Origin: Ostrea edulis
Taxonomy: Eukaryota
Direction of reading: 5' to 3'
Assembly (NCBI RefSeq): GCF_947568905.1
Contig: NC_079172.1
Coordinates: forward strand, 31,930,001-31,994,000
Length of the DNA: 64,000 bases
Numbering within the stretch: the stretch's first letter is position 1; each line of letters starts with the position of its first letter. The position numbers were made by a program, and so were the translations under genes. The notes under the pieces were generated by a model. That model ran no database searches. It saw only the letters and a list, made by a program, of their open reading frames with translations, and was not told the DNA's origin. Shown here in pieces: positions 13,416 to 21,130 of this stretch.

Positions 13416-15491
13416 GTATGTAGACTAATGAGATAAAATTGTTTGTGGCTGTAAATAGAAAACACATTGAAAGTCCTCTTGACATTCAGTGTGTGCTATT
13501 ATTAACTATCATTATGCTCTCATCCTATCGGAAAACAAGACACTCTGGACATGCCTTAATGCATTAACCGCCGAAGTGTTTTCCACAGTTGCACTACCGG
13601 TATTTATAGATCAAAATAAAAATATAAACGACTTACAATCCATAAATTTTATACATTATATAATATTTGTTTAATTATGTATATGAAACTAATTCATATT
13701 CATGATATATTCATGTTTCCAGTAGCTATTTTTTGCTTACAACAGTTGATCTATTCCGTGAGGAGAGAAAAAAAAAATAGCAGAAATATTAGAAACTGTT
13801 TTGATAATCTCTGATATAGTATCAATAAAATATGTCCAAGCTAAAATTAAATTTAAAGAACATAACACACAATAAATCATACTCATATTCATCAAAAGTA
13901 ATGCTGCAGAATATACCCAAGTTTAAACAATATCTTATCTATCTAATTTCAGTATCACGTAATACAAACAACGAATAAATACTGCTATCTATCTTAATAC
14001 CTAAAGCATTACTAAATATTTATGATAAGGAAATATATAAATACTGTCCTCTATTATAGTACGTGAAATGTTTACTAAATATTATTTATACAATATCTCT
14101 TCCTACGAAGAAGATGTAACTTGTAAATGATATTCATGATATTTAGATTTAATCTTAATCTGGATTCAAAGTTGATCAAAAGTGAATTTACAAACTGTTA
14201 GTTTACCTTCTCTATATTTATATGTATATGACTTGTATGTGTGTATATGTATGAATGAATATATATGTGTATGTGTTTGTATATTTATATATTTAATTAT
14301 TTTGTGTTCCACTTCCATTCTGACTTTGATGTTAGGGAGACGGCTAAAATAGGCTGTGCCTGCTACCCAATCCTATTCATTTTTGAATAAAATATTGTTT
14401 AATTTTTTCTTTTAAATTATAGACAAATATAAATAAATACATGAGTGAACATTAACACTGCTACATTAGATTAAAGATGAAAATATAAAATACAGGCAAT
14501 GTTACCATGGAAACACAGTTATGGTATTAGAAAGGGCGTTCCTATCCAATGATTGGTAATATATTTGCATTCTCAGTTTCTGGCAAGTCTGTTGAACAGT
14601 GCTATAGTACATGTAATGAATGTACGGAAATTATATAACTTTACGTAGATTTAAGTTTTATTTCTCACAATCGTATAGTTACAAGTCTAGGGACATTATA
14701 AAATTTAATGTAGATACAAGTTATAGCTCACAACCGTACAGTAATAAATCTAGGGAGAGTATGTAATTTAATGTAGATACAAGTTATAGCTCACAACCGT
14801 ACAGTAATAAATTTAGGGAGAGTATGTAATTTAATGTAGATATTAGTTGTATCTCATAGACTGTGTCTTTGTTTGGATTTCTTTAGCGACCTGGTTTGTC
14901 AAGTATTGTAATAGTGGTTCGTACTATTGTAAATAATGCTTTATTATGGTACATTTTGTGTCAATGTATTAGTCGGTGCTTTTCTCGCCGTTTAGTAAGT
15001 GCCCCGTTCTGTTTATATATAATAAGGATTCAGGGGCCACCAGTAACTATCCTTGTTGCCTCCAAATTTAAGCATTCAGTTTTCTCAACCATGTTTCTAG
15101 ATAAATATTTCCATATGATATCAGTATATTCTGGCTATGGACGGACAAAATTACATTAAGAACTATATTTCTGAACATTTCTGCTCTGGTGACTGAATCA
15201 TACATATAAGCCTAAATGCAATGGGTTAAGAAATGCAGGAAACTTACTCCGATTTTCACCTTAACGTATTTGTTACATCAAACCACTGCGTTGAGTGAGA
15301 TTTCTGTTATATTAGAACTATATAAGGGTATTATGAAACACAACACGATCTAATCCTAAACCTATATGTACGCAAATAAGAACTATACATCCAGGCATGT
15401 TGGTTTAAACGTTTTTTTTAAAATTAAAATGAACTGAGATCAGACAAATTCTGTATTTTTCTTTGTTTACATTTTCGTTTGTTTGTTGTGC

Positions 15492-15499
15492 TATAAATA
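15492..15499 (+). promoter_or_regulatory. Candidate TATA box of the cytokine-like gene
   Basis: TATAAATA about 200 bp upstream of ATG 15703. Confidence 0.4.
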
Positions 15500-15702
15500 G
15501 ATCTGGACTTCATCGTCTATTTTAAGAAGCAAAATTCTCAACTAGCTAGTTCGATATCTATTGGCTATTATTTACCTACAGCATCATCTGATACTGAATT
15601 CAAAAGTGAAAATATTAATTCAATATTTCCAACGAATGTGTATATAACTAAACCACACAACTAAAATGGCATTAGTGAAAAATGAACAAACTCCAGAGAA
15701 AC

Positions 15703-15793
15703 ATGAAAAAAGTCGTCCCAGGTGTCTTGATAACATTATTGGCGATGTTTCTATTAGGTATTGTACTGACCGTTCTGGTCCGTGCTTCACACA
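15703..15793 (+). CDS. Cytokine-like gene exon 1 (signal peptide)
   Basis: MKKVVPG...VRASH, donor A|GTATGT; alternative in-frame ATG at 15682. Confidence 0.8.
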
Positions 15794-18606
15794 GTATGTT
15801 TCAAATATTAATTCATCTGCATGCAAGCTTTTATCTTATTTTGTACTTTTTATTTTATTTTATTTTTGAACTTTTAGAATAGAAAACATTACTTCAACTT
15901 TAGGTCCCCCCCCCCCCCTTTTTATTGTTATATTTATGTATTCTTGTTTATTTCAAATTTTTAAAATCACTGAATTTGTAAATTTGGAAAAGTAGATTGT
16001 ATCGATCTAGCTGTCCAAAATATTTAAAATGCATGAAATTACACCCAGTTATGCTAATTAAAAGTTTCTATTTTCAAACATTTCGTTCCTTTACTACCAA
16101 TATAATAATAATTTTAAAAAATCGAAATTTTCTGTCATGTGTATACGAAAACAAGTAGAACATCTAAAAGCATACATATTTTTTTCTTAAAGCTGTAACG
16201 GATTTTTGTTTTGTACAGGCAACAGTACAAGTGAAGCAGCGCCCCTCTCTACTACAGAAAAGCCAGCCAGATGGACGAATCCCTGCAATGCTACGAGAGA
16301 TCTTAGTTCCAGAAATTTTACAGTACCGTTTCTTCCAGAATTTGAAAAGATTCAGAGGATCAGTGAAAAGTTACTAACCGTGATGGATATTACAGTCACG
16401 CTTAAGACCAAAATAGTAAGTAGCCTAATTTTCTTATTTTCTTTTGCTCTTTAGATTACAAATCTGTAATATTCTTTTGATGGGTTTTTTCCTGGTTCAT
16501 TTTTCACGTGAATTAAAAAAGAGCCACATTCACAAACGTGTCTATTCCACCTTTGTTGTTGTTTTATATTAAAAACTCATAGATTTGGCTCGGACTTAAT
16601 TTCGATTTTTTCCCCCCTATGTTCATGTACCATTGTAGGTTTCACAGAAAACACCGTGGCCTCGTCTCAAAACAACCCTGAAGTAAATTCTTGTTCAAAT
16701 TAATTCAATATTTTAAATTTACAACTCAATATTGAAAAATAATAATAATAATATTTATTTTCCTCTTTAAAAAAAAAATTGGGTGAATGATAGTTTAAGA
16801 ATTCTGCTTACGACAAAAAGACAGTAATAATTTATGCAATCCTTAAATAATTTTTGGATACACCGTATATTTCTGGCAATTGCAATAATTTCAAAACTTT
16901 TTTTCTCGGAGCCGTTAGGATCTGGAGCAGTATTTAGGTTGTCTAAAAATCTTATTGAGTGTATTTCATAACTAAATGTTTCAAAACAGAGAAATGTATT
17001 TGAAGTACATACGTGTACATTTTGTTGCCTTGATTACATCATGTACTGGCAAACGGGTACACTAAAGCACTTCCAACTTTATTTTCACAATTAATTTAAC
17101 GTCCATAACAGCTCAATATAGAGTCCCTTAAAATATCCGCCACATAGAGGTAGGGAAAAAACCAACAACAAAAACACCCCCCCCCCAACCCCCGTATTTC
17201 CCTGCGTTGGTCTTTGTAATTTTCTGACCAGTACCTTTTGCATTTTCTTCAGTATTATTTCGCCATTACAATAATGCCCCTGGGTGAGGAAATCCACGAA
17301 CTTGTATGAAAACTTTAAAATAATTAGCTATAATTCAGTTGTAACCCCTTACAGTTGGTAGGATAAAGAAAAACTTGGATATCCACAGATTGACCACAGG
17401 GACTAAGCCCGTTTGGGCCAGAACTCTGTGATACCATAAATATAGTATATTTATGGTATCACAGAGTTGGGGCCCAAACGGACTTAGCCCCTGTGAGATT
17501 GACCTTTCACTGACCCCGCAAAGGGAGATAATTAAAATATACTGGTTTATAGGTGTATTGGTTGAATAGATATGGATGTATTTGAATGGAGACATTGATA
17601 TATAATTAAACATATAGTTGTAACAGAACACCTGTTATATTTCCATCCATTTACTGGTTTTTACAGTTTCCTGACCACGTGGATTCATTATACAAGCATT
17701 TAAATAATTATGCACTGCATTTTTTCTCTCCTACTCATATATCATACATGTACGTCTATCTTCATTACACAGGCAAATGAGCGGGTCCAGAGTTCGATTA
17801 TGACGTCAGCTCTGAATTCACAACACATAGACGGATTCCCCAACACAACTCTGTCCCAACATAATATGGAGGAATATAAGGACAACGTAAGTTTCTCTTT
17901 CTTGTCCCCTGCCCCCCTCCCTCCCCTTTGTACGACAACATAGATTGACAGTTTCTATGTCATGCGCTCATCAATAGGAGCTAACGTCACCGGAGGCCCC
18001 ATATCGTGATGGGTGTTGTCACGATAATCTTATTGTGCCCTAAGGCCTGGCATAGAGCATGATAGGTCAATTTAATTTTGTGGCACTAGTGACAAATGAA
18101 ACATAAAACAATATGTAAATAATTAAAACTGTGGTATTTACTCATTCAAAAGACCCAGTTAACAGTGGGTTTTTTTTTTTTCCTAAGCAAATTATTTATA
18201 CAGACGTTTAATCTTTATCCATTCAGAAAATTTCTGTTTCTCCTTCCAACAGGTAACCCTGGCGTATATAAGAAGCTATCGGGATTTGTCGGTGGTTGCA
18301 GTATTCCTAGAGGCCGTCCGAGAAGATGAAGACCAGTATGAATACGGTAGCTGGACCCCTGAAATCAAAGATAAAGAAAATAGACTCTATGGCCTTCTCT
18401 GCGAACTCCATAATGCCATCATCACGAATGGGGCCGTCATTGAATACGAATCACGTGATATTATGCCCCAGGAGTGGCGTGGTATGTCTAATCGTTCCTA
18501 TAGAAACTATCGCGATTACGTCATCATGAAAGACAGTGGCCTAGTCTATCAAAGTTTCTTCAACATGTACCAAACTATTTTGAATTCGTTTAAAGTAGGG
18601 GTCTAG
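15703..18606 (+). CDS. Secreted Unpaired/IL-6-like four-helix cytokine candidate (4 exons, ~251 aa)
   Basis: Exons 15703-15793, 16219-16415, 17773-17886, 18253-18606; all introns GT-AG with consistent phases 1,0,0. Signal peptide MKKVVPGVLITLLAMFLLGIVLTVLVRA; motifs WTNPC, AVFLEAVREDE, LYGLLCELHNAI, RNYRDYVIMKD; five N-glycosylation sequons. Confidence 0.8.
16219..16415 (+). CDS. Cytokine-like gene exon 2
   Basis: TTTTGTACAG| SNSTSEAAP...WTNPCNAT...KTKI |GTAAGT. Confidence 0.88.
17394..17496. repeat. Central hairpin of an intronic MITE (~17330-17640)
   Basis: Stem AACTCTGTGATACCATAAATATA-g-TATATTTATGGTATCACAGAGTT, extended by imperfect outer arms. Confidence 0.7.
17773..17886 (+). CDS. Cytokine-like gene exon 3
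   Basis: ACACAG| ANERVQ...EEYKDN |GTAAGT; 114 bp, phase 0-0. Confidence 0.88.
18253..18606 (+). CDS. Cytokine-like gene exon 4 (terminal)
   Basis: TCCTTCCAACAG| VTLAYIRSY...SFKVGV*; AATAAA at 18916-18921. Confidence 0.9.
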   Translation, partial: VTLAYIRSYRDLSVVAVFLEAVREDEDQYEYGSWTPEIKDKENRLYGLLCELHNAIITNGAVIEYESRDIMPQEWRGMSNRSYRNYRDYVIMKDSGLVYQSFFNMYQTILNSFKVGV

Positions 18607-21130
18607 TAGCGTGACGTCATGTCCGGATCGAACTCCAGTATTGGTTCACGTACTATTATTATTGGGTGGATTTATACTGTTTTTACATTTACCTGGATGT
18701 TTTTTAATTTAGTAAAATGAATACAATAACACTCCATCACTTATATTTAAGTAGACTATGGATCCAATCTTCTTTCCATTTTTTGTCATCTAATTCACAC
18801 ATAAAACCAGAGGTACATATTTGTTTAATTGAGATACAGGCCGGGGTATTACATGTTAAAATTATCTGTAAATTAAAAAAAATTCATGATATGCAATCAT
18901 GCACTTGTGGAATTAAATAAAACAATTCTGCATTTGTTATATATTTGTTATCTTGTTATATATTTGTTATCTTCTGTTATGTGAAAATCATCTTCAAAAT
19001 GGTTATTTTGGCCCAAAAATGTAAATATAAATTGAGATGCTGTGAAAATATTATGCTGAGAAAGGGCAGATTTTTTAAATGTATTTTAACAAGCATTCAT
19101 ATATGAACATAATATGTGAGTTTGAATGAAAAATCACAAGTCAAATTTTTAAAATATTCATATTAGTGGTGTTGCAGTGCCGTATTTTTGACTGCCGAGG
19201 GCCTGTATTGAGTTCAATTTTGTACCACCATTATTAAAAAACATGAAACTATGTTAAAATTTCATTTTTAATTATTTAGTTAAACATATTTATTTCATAT
19301 TTGAGGAAAAAAATTGCAGCATCATACCTCAAACAAAATTTTATGGACATATTCTAGGACTTCTTCAATGAATTCTGATATTGCCGTTTGACAAATGGGG
19401 GTACACGTAATAAAAATACCATAATTTACTCATTATACTGACAACCCCCCATTTTTTTGTTTTTATCATACCCTGAAATGAACAATCTAAGTATCTAAAC
19501 TCAAATTTTTGAGAAATCACAAGTAGGTCCAGGACTAGGGACCTACCTTAACAGTAGTTCCTAGTCATTCTTGGCGATGCCCAACGTCATTTGGAAAGGC
19601 AGCTTCCATCTAATTCTGTTTTAATGATGAAATGACATTTTTGTGAATTTTTTTTTTTTATTGTAAATTTTAATATCGGTTCTGTATGGTCCCCATTCAT
19701 TTCATCACCACTTCTGAAATTCTCTAATGCCTTGGTGTTCAGTAACAAGCTTGCCAACAATGTCTTTCAATGTCTTCAAGCATCATATCATTGCTTTCCA
19801 TGATCTCAATGTTATAACTTTTTGTTATGGGTCTGAAATATTCTAGGATCTCATTAATCACTGCCAAGCTCAGGTTCATTGATTTAGTTGTCGTCCTTTT
19901 CTTTTCACATGCCGTTTTCTCCATTTCTTACAGTGACCCATTTACATGTATAAATACGTTTTCTATATGTCATTATTAACAATTAAAAAAGAAAAACCGC
20001 AAGGTCCAGTCTTTTGGTACGTTGTTTTAATTCAAACATCGTCATAGAGAATGTTTTTAAGGAAGAATGATACATAGTCAAAATGGCGCAAATTTTTTTT
20101 CTTCTCCAGATTATTTTCTATGCATTTAAAAAAAAACACCACCAAATAATGTAAATTTGCGCGAATCCCCTCAAAGATTATTTTCTACTAAAATTGCATA
20201 TTTTAAAAATTAAATAATGTAAATTTGAAGTTTTTCGCTTTGAAAATATTATTGTATACATATCCTCCACTTTCCATTCATATCAGGCTTCTCTGGTGTG
20301 TTATTCATCCTTAAAACGACTAGAAAAGAAGAGGTGTGTGTATTTTGCATGTAATTTATTGTTTGATATGACTTCACAGTAAGGTTGTGTGTGTACATGT
20401 TATTTAAAAATTTACATAGGATTTATTACGTGATCACGTTATCTGTTGGAATACTATGGCGTTTTGTGATAATTACTTAATATGTATGCATTCCTCTAAC
20501 ACTTATGAAGATTATACATATTTATATCCATTAACATGTAATAACAGATGTATATTTAACAAACACTATATTTTTAGTTCTAGTTGTTGCCAGTCTTAAA
20601 GCCAGGGAAATGATCTGTGTAATTATGTTATATACGTTTGTTTTTAAAATATCTCTTGTAATATTTAAACTCGTTCATGTATGGTATATTTACTTTAAAA
20701 TCTTAGATTTATACATGTATTCTTTTGTTTTTAAAATATATTTTGTAATATGTTGTTTTAACTCATTATCTACTTAAAATGTCCAGAAACTTGAACAGAA
20801 TTAATCTAGGTTTATATACATGTGTGTATATTTTTGTTTTTCAAATATCTCATGTAATATTTTTTTTAAAACTCATTTATGTATGGTAGGTACACTTAAA
20901 ATGTCCAGAAATTTTAACAGAATTAATCTCAGTTTATATATGTATATTTTTGTTTTTCAAATATCTTTTGTAATATTTTTAAACTTGTTCACTGTGTATG
21001 ATATCTGTCGTTGAATTCCTGATTAAACATGCAGACTTTACATGGTGTTTAATAACAATGCAATTCACTGTAATCTACAAGATATTACTGTGGAAGTGGG
21101 CAGAGGGACCACCTGTCCCCCTCCCTCCTC

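What the first reader, a model, noticed from the sequence alone, without database searches (positions are those of the whole stretch)
15703..18606. Molluscan Unpaired/IL-6-like cytokine candidate
Seen: signal peptide plus three exons give a ~251-aa secreted protein with two conserved-looking Cys (WTNPC; LLCELH), amphipathic helices and five sequons. Recalled knowledge: WxNPC, AVxLExxxxDE/Q, LCExxxA and RxxRDxxIxxD mark insect Unpaired-family JAK/STAT ligands. Inference: a four-helix-bundle cytokine for a Domeless/gp130-like receptor. Such ligands are hard to find by BLAST outside arthropods.
Basis: partly seen in the sequence, partly recalled or inferred. Interest (0 to 1): 0.8.

Follow-up and report, generated by a model that had tools for sequence, protein, structure and literature searches.

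The report
Oyster IL-6/Unpaired-like helical cytokine gene
This flat-oyster gene, listed publicly only as "uncharacterized", encodes a secreted protein predicted to fold like the vertebrate cytokines IL-11, IL-6 and CNTF, and it belongs to a wide invertebrate family that may be the missing activator of JAK/STAT signalling in molluscs.

Summary
A four-exon gene with GT/AG introns at 15682/15703-18606 (+) encodes a 251-258 aa protein. It is Ostrea edulis LOC125659921, annotated as "uncharacterized". Its only two cysteines are near-invariant across relatives. It has six sequons, not five.

An AlphaFold2 model (pLDDT 89, pTM 0.81) has four long helices with long-short-long connections. Its best solved-structure matches are IL-11 (Z 18.3, 2.5 Å over 164 of 165 residues), CLCF1, IL-27p28, IL-6, LIF, OSM and CNTF. 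Non-cytokine bundles score Z 8 or less.

A profile of the last exon finds 329 protein clusters in bivalves, gastropods, an annelid, insects, crustaceans and a mite. Mollusc and arthropod profiles align at 99.8% probability (E 1e-29).

The oyster protein does not hit Pfam Unpaired. Arthropod relatives hit it only below threshold (11 of 69, best E 7.6e-5), and a mite member nearly reaches the IL11 threshold.

Receptor binding, JAK/STAT activation and expression in this species were not tested. The oyster has at least 12 family loci. A very young high-copy repeat replaces the last four codons and the 3'UTR.

Verdict: a real, probably new IL-6/Upd-type cytokine candidate. Fold and family are well supported. 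Function is inferred.

The parts
15492..15499 (+). TATAAATA, a possible core promoter about 190 nt before the annotated start codon
   Evidence: Read from the sequence. Inference only, because the transcription start was not mapped.
15666..15668 (+). Upstream out-of-frame ATG (AAAATGG context) opening a 35-47 codon overlapping reading frame
   Evidence: Whether it lies inside the 5'UTR is unknown.
15682..15793 (+). Coding exon 1: short basic N-terminus plus a 16-23 residue hydrophobic segment (signal peptide or signal anchor). The alternative donor used by RefSeq isoform X2 is at 15757.
   Evidence: Hydropathy peaks at about 3.0 over residues 15-33 of the long form. The cleavage site was not predicted.
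16219..16415 (+). Exon 2: N-terminal segment with three sequons and WTNPC (16272-16286), then most of helix A (from 16338)
   Evidence: Contigs from the related oyster carry the exon 2-3 junction.
17395..17495 (.). High-copy 50+50 nt palindrome inside intron 2 (MITE-like); not part of the protein
   Evidence: 92% complementary arms. (word depth hundreds of times that of the flanks in four DNA runs).
17773..17886 (+). Exon 3: end of helix A (to 17787) and the long A-B loop with a short helix and the conserved H(I/L)DGFP motif
18253..18606 (+). Exon 4: helix B (18253-18339, AVFLE..EDE), helix C (18355-18426, LLCELH with its Cys codon at 18400-18402), C-D loop (SRDIM), helix D (18493-18600, R..RDYVIMKD), stop at 18604-18606
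   Evidence: The phase-0 acceptor in front of helix B is shared by all paralogues examined.
18590..19160 (+). Start of a very young high-copy repeat (it runs beyond 19160). It supplies the last four residues (KVGV), the stop codon and the 3'UTR.
   Evidence: the 39 other places listed match from window position about 18590 onward, most at 99-100% identity; contigs break at 18593, depth rises a hundred-fold or more, and one contig bridges the junction. Orthologues end in ...NSS instead.

Best explanation
The gene encodes a secreted (or type II anchored and then shed), N-glycosylated long-chain four-helix-bundle cytokine.

It belongs to an old protostome family that includes distant relatives of insect Unpaired. 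Its predicted fold is closest to the vertebrate IL-6/IL-11/CLCF1/CNTF group.

Proposed mechanism:
1. The N-terminal WTNPC segment is tied to helix C by the single disulfide.
2. The bundle binds the cytokine-binding module of a Domeless/gp130-like class I receptor.
3. This brings receptor-bound JAK kinases together and activates STAT.

Shown here: the gene model, the family and the predicted fold. Inferred: secretion, the disulfide, the receptor and the pathway.
For: Gene model:
- It is identical to a RefSeq isoform over exons 2-4.
- Its exon 2-3-4 junctions are seen in intron-less contigs of a related oyster.
- It sits in a 100%-supported oyster orthologue clade.

Fold:
- AF2 pLDDT 89.1, pTM 0.81; helices at residues 66-96, 130-158, 164-187 and 210-245, joined by a long, a short and a long connection.
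- All top 50 Foldseek PDB matches are long-chain class I cytokines.
- VIA-align Z scores: IL-11 18.3 (rmsd 2.5 Å, 164 of 165 residues), CLCF1 17.5, IL-27p28 16.6, IL-6 16.4, LIF 16.0, OSM 15.9, CNTF 15.8. Interferons score about 11 and ferritin-like bundles 8 or less.
- An ant relative folded separately gives the same ranking.
- Language-model neighbours are CT-2/CNTF/IL-11/IL-6/LIF clusters at 0.93-0.94.

Family:
- 329 clusters at E <= 1e-3 and 96 at E <= 1e-10.
- They come from bivalves, gastropods, an annelid, insects, crustaceans and a mite.
- Lophotrochozoan versus arthropod profiles: 99.8% probability, E 9.6e-30, 209 columns.

Links to named families:
- 11 of 69 arthropod members hit Pfam Unpaired, best E 7.6e-5, always over profile positions about 20-177.
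- The Tetranychus member hits Pfam IL11 at 24.3 bits against a cut-off of 25.8.
- UniRef names the Lottia member 'Ciliary neurotrophic factor'.

Pathway:
- STAT DNA-binding domain exons are present in this genome.
- A 2026 survey reports an IL6R-like receptor, JAK and STAT in molluscs, but no ligand (PMC13203501).
Against: - The oyster protein has no significant hit to any Pfam cytokine family or to Unpaired.
- It has no sequence-level hit to a solved cytokine.
- The link to Drosophila Upd rests on sub-threshold hits of arthropod relatives.
- The fold is a prediction.
- A shared fold does not show function, and helical bundles tend to give high Z scores.
- No RNA run holding this locus was found. 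The four runs laid on it are genomic DNA, so expression in O. edulis is not shown here.
- A repeat has replaced the native C-terminal four residues and the 3'UTR, which could affect expression.
- Exon-level searches did not find the receptor or JAK in this genome. That result is uninformative rather than negative.
Confidence: 0.65

Rival explanations
1. It is a helical-cytokine-fold hormone or growth factor that still acts through a class I type receptor. Its role would be metabolic, neurotrophic or developmental (like leptin, prolactin or CNTF) rather than an immune or injury cytokine. Alternatively, it is a natural antagonist or decoy within the expanded oyster family.
For: - Placental lactogen, growth hormone and leptin also match well, at Z 15.3, 13.2 and 11.8.
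- Atlas neighbours often carry Hormone_1 labels.
- The genome holds at least 12 family loci, which leaves room for divergent roles.
- No induction data were obtained.
Against: - The seven best matches are all gp130-family cytokines.
- The sub-threshold sequence signals point to Unpaired and IL-11, not to hormone families.
Confidence: 0.2
2. It is a secreted or membrane-anchored four-helix protein whose resemblance to cytokines is convergent or a modelling bias, and whose real function is unrelated (structural, lipid-binding or metal-binding).
For: - There is no significant direct sequence match to any cytokine family.
- The tool's own note says helical models typically reach a best Z of about 14.
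Against: - Z 18.3 covers 164 of 165 IL-11 residues in sequence order, and the overhand loop pattern is specific to cytokines.
- Ferritin-like bundles match only three helices, at Z 8 or less.
- Unpaired and IL11 are the recurrent or strongest sub-threshold Pfam hits among relatives.
Confidence: 0.1
3. This O. edulis copy is functionally impaired or silent because of the repeat inserted at its 3' end, even though the family as a whole is functional.
For: - The repeat starts at 18590, inside the last codons, and replaces the 3'UTR.
- No RNA-holding run was found.
Against: - The reading frame is intact, and only four residues at the tip of helix D differ from orthologues.
- RefSeq lists at least two isoforms.
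- The insertion is present in all four DNA runs, with no empty allele seen, which is compatible with a tolerated change.
Confidence: 0.05

Closest known systems
Vertebrate IL-6/gp130 family cytokines (IL-11, CLCF1, CNTF, IL-6, LIF, OSM, IL-27p28)
   Same: - Predicted long-chain up-up-down-down four-helix bundle of the same size, with Z 15.8-18.3 and rmsd 2.5-3.4 Å over nearly the whole solved chain.
- A secreted glycoprotein layout.
- From memory, LIF and OSM also tie their N-terminal segment to helix C by a disulfide. The single Cys pair here would do the same.
   Different: - Only 7-12% identity.
- No Pfam IL6, IL11, CNTF or LIF_OSM hit for the oyster protein.
- A different cysteine pattern.
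- The known receptor-site motifs were not examined.
- The family-specific motifs (WxNPC, AVFLE..DE, SRDIM, R..RDY.I.KD) were not compared with vertebrate cytokines here.
Insect Unpaired ligands (Drosophila Upd1-3, Pfam PF15972; Aedes Upd-like, bioRxiv 10.1101/2025.09.21.677592)
   Same: - Secreted, glycosylated helical ligand candidates.
- The oyster family is homologous (E 1e-29) to an arthropod family whose members give colinear sub-threshold PF15972 hits.
- Aedes Upd-like was shown to need Domeless to induce Socs. This is the mechanism proposed here.
   Different: - The oyster protein itself does not match PF15972.
- Drosophila Upd sequences could not be obtained, so the motifs were not compared directly.
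- From memory, Drosophila Upds are much longer (about 400 aa).
CgIFNLP, the interferon-like protein of Crassostrea gigas, with its receptor CgIFNR-3
   Same: An oyster cytokine-like protein reported to bind a cytokine receptor-like protein and to drive STAT and ISRE reporters (PMC8218723).
   Different: - It is not the orthologue. Its RNAi primer begins at a start codon encoding MERKKDK, whereas the M. gigas orthologue of this gene begins MNKRIEM.
- Neither its primers nor the peptides they encode occur in any of the 37 DNA records (36 loci and the window) or 262 proteins gathered here.
- Whether it is a distant family member was not tested.

Membership tests
Class I long-chain four-helix-bundle cytokines (IL-6/gp130 type) | Four long helices in up-up-down-down order, with long A-B and C-D overhand loops and a short B-C turn | tested here: met
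   - AF2 model with pLDDT 89.1: helices 66-96, 130-158, 164-187 and 210-245.
- Sequential alignment to IL-11 over 164 of 165 residues, Z 18.3.
- The Foldseek top 50 are all such cytokines.
This is a predicted model, not an experimental structure.
Class I long-chain four-helix-bundle cytokines (IL-6/gp130 type) | Entry into the secretory pathway | tested here: met
   A basic N-terminus is followed by a 16-23 residue hydrophobic segment, and there are six sequons and two Cys. No signal-peptide predictor was available, so cleavage versus signal anchor is open.
Class I long-chain four-helix-bundle cytokines (IL-6/gp130 type) | Significant sequence or profile match to a curated family of the clan (IL6, IL11, CNTF, LIF_OSM, GCSF, Hormone_1) | tested here: not met
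   - No Pfam hit for the exons or for P0170.
- No PDB sequence hit.
- Only a mite relative comes close: IL11, 24.3 bits against a cut-off of 25.8.
Class I long-chain four-helix-bundle cytokines (IL-6/gp130 type) | Binds the cytokine-binding module of a class I receptor and activates JAK/STAT | not testable with these tools
   The receptor is multi-exon and had no usable sequence reference, so no co-fold was run. STAT is present in the genome. Receptor and JAK searches were blank but uninformative.
Unpaired (Pfam PF15972) | Match to PF15972 above the 27-bit gathering score | tested here: not met
   - No hit for P0170 or for any lophotrochozoan member of alignment A2.
- Nothing in the whole genome.
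- Arthropod relatives reach about 12-18 bits in the hits whose scores were seen, with E from 7.6e-5 to 0.17.
Unpaired (Pfam PF15972) | Homology to arthropod proteins that carry the Unpaired signal | tested here: met
   - hhalign of A5 against A4: 99.8%, E 9.6e-30, 209 columns from WxNPC to the C-terminus.
- The last-exon profile hits arthropod proteins at about 1e-13 to 1e-9.
- PF15972 is the joint most frequent Pfam hit among the 69 arthropod members and has much the lowest E-value (11 of 69).
Unpaired (Pfam PF15972) | Domeless-dependent activation of JAK/STAT | not testable with these tools
   Needs experiments. Shown for Aedes Upd-like in a preprint.

The most novel reading that the evidence does not exclude
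This gene and its relatives form one ancient, vertically inherited protostome family. That family would be the true counterpart of Drosophila Unpaired and of the vertebrate IL-6/CNTF group. It would then be the Domeless/gp130 ligand reported as 'missing' in molluscs, annelids, honey bees, aphids, scale insects and mites.
Probability: 0.5. Interest if true: 0.85.

Novelty: new member of a known kind. Interest (0 to 1): 0.7.

Why it matters
Molluscs have STAT, JAK and an IL6R-like receptor. A 2026 survey still found no IL-6-like ligand in them and suggested that other ligands act instead (PMC13203501).

Honey bee and scale insect genome papers likewise list Unpaired as absent (PMC1847501, PMC11084805).

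This report gives three things:
- A concrete, well-conserved ligand candidate.
- A gene family of at least 12 loci in the oyster.
- Relatives in Hymenoptera, Hemiptera, crustaceans and a mite.

That makes the question directly testable by binding and reporter assays. It would also give oyster immunology, including work on Bonamia and herpesvirus disease, a handle on cytokine signalling.

If the family proves to be the common ancestor of Upd and the IL-6 family, helical cytokine signalling through gp130-type receptors would date back to the bilaterian ancestor.

Tried and rejected
- **Pfam on the three exon translations.** No hits.
- **PDB sequence searches** with exon 4, the last-exon profile and the 60-sequence profile. 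Only unrelated weak hits (FtsX, Rb, a TetR-family regulator) at E of 0.03 or more.
- **Pfam Unpaired against the whole genome.** Nothing.
- **Exon-level searches for IL6Ra-bind, Lep_receptor_Ig and Jak1_Phl.** All blank. The tool warns that such blanks are uninformative.
- **Word search with the arthropod alignment** to reach named Drosophila Upd proteins. It returned mainly Hymenoptera plus a few other arthropods, all unnamed and without Pfam labels.
- **Atlas search with an ant member.** No cluster labelled Unpaired.
- **RNA evidence.** No RNA run holds the locus. The four runs laid on it are genomic DNA and show no splice joints.
- **AU-rich elements in the 3'UTR.** ATTTA is mildly enriched. 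I dropped this as evidence because the 3'UTR is repeat sequence.
- **Identity with CgIFNLP.** Rejected for the orthologue.
- **Receptor co-folding.** Not run, because no receptor sequence could be given by reference.
It has no reference, so I did not type it in. RefSeq isoform X2 (P0170), which has the same mature part, was folded instead.
- **Accession search in papers.** No paper mentions these loci.
Full report
**1. What is there**

Reading 15200-19200 and joining 15703-15793, 16219-16415, 17773-17886 and 18253-18606 gives an open 756-nt frame of 251 aa. Every intron starts with GT and ends with AG.

The contig length and a paralogue's accession identify the genome as Ostrea edulis, chromosome-scale contig C9. 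The gene is RefSeq LOC125659921, "uncharacterized protein".

- RefSeq starts at the in-frame ATG at 15682, seven codons upstream.
- Isoform X2 uses a donor at 15757, which removes 12 hydrophobic residues.
- There are six sequons, not five.

The protein has only two cysteines, in WTNPC and LLCELH.

Five intron-less contigs of about 1.1 kb come from five runs of a related oyster. Their product is 59% identical to the Saccostrea orthologue and 61% identical to this gene's last exon. They join exons 2, 3 and 4 exactly at the predicted junctions. Four of the five also lack a 39-nt segment at the place where the Ostrea X2 isoform lacks 36 nt. In those contigs I found no ATG-started signal exon upstream. 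This is unexplained.

**2. Family**

Pfam and PDB sequence searches with the exons were blank.

The last exon has 11-13 further matches in the same genome:
- seven intact last exons at C9:20.62-20.79 Mb;
- three divergent last exons at C9:20.80-20.89 Mb;
- one last exon on C5;
- two fragments.

All paralogues examined share the phase-0 acceptor in front of helix B.

A profile of nine last exons was searched against 1.8 billion representative proteins. It gave 329 clusters at E <= 1e-3 and 96 at E <= 1e-10, always at the C-terminus of proteins of about 210-420 aa.

Source names place these proteins in the following groups, and almost all are "uncharacterized":
- oysters, mussels, a scallop and an ark clam;
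- Lottia, Aplysia, Haliotis and Pomacea;
- the annelid Owenia;
- beetles, wasps, ants, bees, a planthopper and a whitefly;
- crustaceans;
- the mite Tetranychus.

UniRef calls the Lottia member "Ciliary neurotrophic factor".

Lophotrochozoan and arthropod profiles align over 209 columns, from WxNPC to the C-terminus, at 99.8% probability and E 9.6e-30.

A quick maximum-likelihood tree gives three results:
- arthropods fall on one side of a supported branch (SH-aLRT 95);
- the window's protein sits in a 100%-supported clade with its Magallana, Crassostrea and Saccostrea orthologues (50-54% identity);
- the one cluster paralogue included (P0003) falls outside that clade.

This pattern fits vertical inheritance.

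**3. Fold**

AlphaFold2 on P0170 with the 60-sequence alignment gave pLDDT 89.1 and pTM 0.81. The model has helices at 66-96, 130-158, 164-187 and 210-245. The A-B connection is long, the B-C connection is five residues, and the C-D connection is long.

The WTNPC segment is confidently placed (block pLDDT 90) between less confident flanks. This fits a disulfide to the invariant Cys in helix C. I could not measure the distance, so the disulfide is an inference.

The top 50 Foldseek matches in the PDB are all long-chain class I cytokines. Their E-values are weak (0.0075-0.24), but TM-scores normalised by target length reach 0.79.

The exhaustive VIA-align search gave:

| Match | Z |
|---|---|
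| IL-11 (rmsd 2.5 Å, 164 of 165 residues) | 18.3 |
| CLCF1 | 17.5 |
| IL-27p28 | 16.6 |
| IL-6 | 16.4 |
| LIF | 16.0 |
| OSM | 15.9 |
| CNTF | 15.8 |
| Placental lactogen | 15.3 |
| Growth hormone | 13.2 |
| Leptin | 11.8 |
| Interferons | about 11 |
| Ferritin-like bundles | 8 or less |

The ESM Atlas shape search put an arthropod cluster first (TM 0.75) and CLCF1 second (TM 0.65). An ant relative folded on its own (pLDDT 90.1) gave the same ranking, with IL-11 at Z 18.4. Language-model neighbours agree, and they include a 114-member mollusc cluster in which 11% of members carry a Pfam IL6 label.

**4. Is it Unpaired?**

Pfam has an Unpaired family, PF15972. Neither the oyster protein nor any lophotrochozoan relative in the 60-sequence alignment, nor the six-frame genome, matches it.

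Among 69 further arthropod relatives, PF15972 ties for the most frequent Pfam hit and has by far the best E-value (11 members, best E 7.6e-5). In nearly all hits whose coordinates were seen, it covers profile positions about 20-177 and runs from just before WxNPC to helix C. All of these hits are below Pfam's 27-bit threshold.

The Tetranychus member hits Pfam IL11 at 24.3 bits, against a threshold of 25.8. A thrips member weakly hits both Unpaired and IL11.

I could not obtain Drosophila Upd sequences for a direct profile comparison. I therefore treat membership in Unpaired as likely but not shown. I do not file the oyster protein under PF15972.

**5. Mechanism and pathway**

By analogy with the IL-6 family and Upd, the protein should bind the cytokine-binding module of a Domeless/gp130-like receptor and activate JAK and STAT.

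In this genome I found STAT DNA-binding exons on C6. Exon-level searches for receptor and JAK domains were blank, which the tool flags as uninformative.

The literature adds the following:
- Molluscs have an IL6R-like receptor, JAK and STAT but no known IL-6-like ligand (PMC13203501).
- Honey bee and scale insect papers list Upd as missing.
- A 2025 preprint shows a mosquito Upd-like acting through Domeless.
- No paper mentions these loci.
- The oyster interferon-like protein CgIFNLP is not the orthologue of this gene.

**6. Caveats**

- Expression of this locus in O. edulis was not shown. No RNA run holds it, and the four runs laid on it are genomic DNA.
- Those runs and a genome search show that a repeat begins at 18590. 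The 39 other places listed match from there on, most at 99-100% identity.
- As a result, the final residues KVGV, the stop codon and the 3'UTR are repeat-derived. Orthologues end in ...NSS.
- The frame is otherwise intact, and no empty allele was seen.

**7. Verdict**

The fold and the wide family are well supported. The Unpaired link is indirect, and receptor binding is inferred.

I rate it a new, uncharacterised member of a known kind (IL-6/Upd-type helical cytokines), in a phylum where no such ligand has been described in the papers searched.

Noticed in passing
window 18590 to beyond 19160: A very young, high-copy repeat starts inside the last codons of the gene. The 39 other genomic places listed match from there on, most at 99-100% identity. 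It supplies the last four residues, the stop codon and the 3'UTR. Its type and far end were not determined.
   Followed up: partly
window 17395-17495: A 50+50 nt palindrome in intron 2 has word depth hundreds of times that of its flanks in four DNA runs. It is probably a MITE family.
   Followed up: partly
G000:C9:20.62-20.89 Mb and C5:21.02 Mb (L002-L008, L015-L036): A tandem cluster of about ten paralogous cytokine-like genes. It includes two last-exon fragments (C9:20695890-20696063 and C9:20784556-20784678) and three divergent copies with an insertion between helices C and D.
   Followed up: partly
P0050, P0073, P0080, P0099, P0115, P0117, P0120, P0131, P0147 (arthropod relatives): Many arthropod members carry a 90-180 residue N-terminal extension with a conserved DRDQRT motif (MLDRDQRTAK in several), followed by an internal hydrophobic segment. 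This suggests type II membrane-anchored precursors rather than classic signal peptides.
   Followed up: no
window 15757 / L009-L013: The alternative donor that trims the hydrophobic N-terminal segment (36 nt in Ostrea isoform X2) has a 39-nt counterpart in contigs of a related oyster. Those contigs have no ATG-started signal exon upstream of exon 2.
   Followed up: partly
window 15666: An out-of-frame ATG in a strong context lies 16 nt before the annotated start. It opens a 35-47 codon overlapping frame and could be a translational brake if it is transcribed.
   Followed up: no
P0106 (280 aa, source unknown): One relative matches the last-exon profile in two separate stretches, so it may carry a tandem duplication of the helix B-D region.
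   Followed up: no
L014 (JGI metagenome contig, 3245 nt): A metagenome contig encodes a last exon 79% identical to this gene and ends in the native ...NNSS. It probably comes from a related oyster's DNA in an environmental sample.
   Followed up: no
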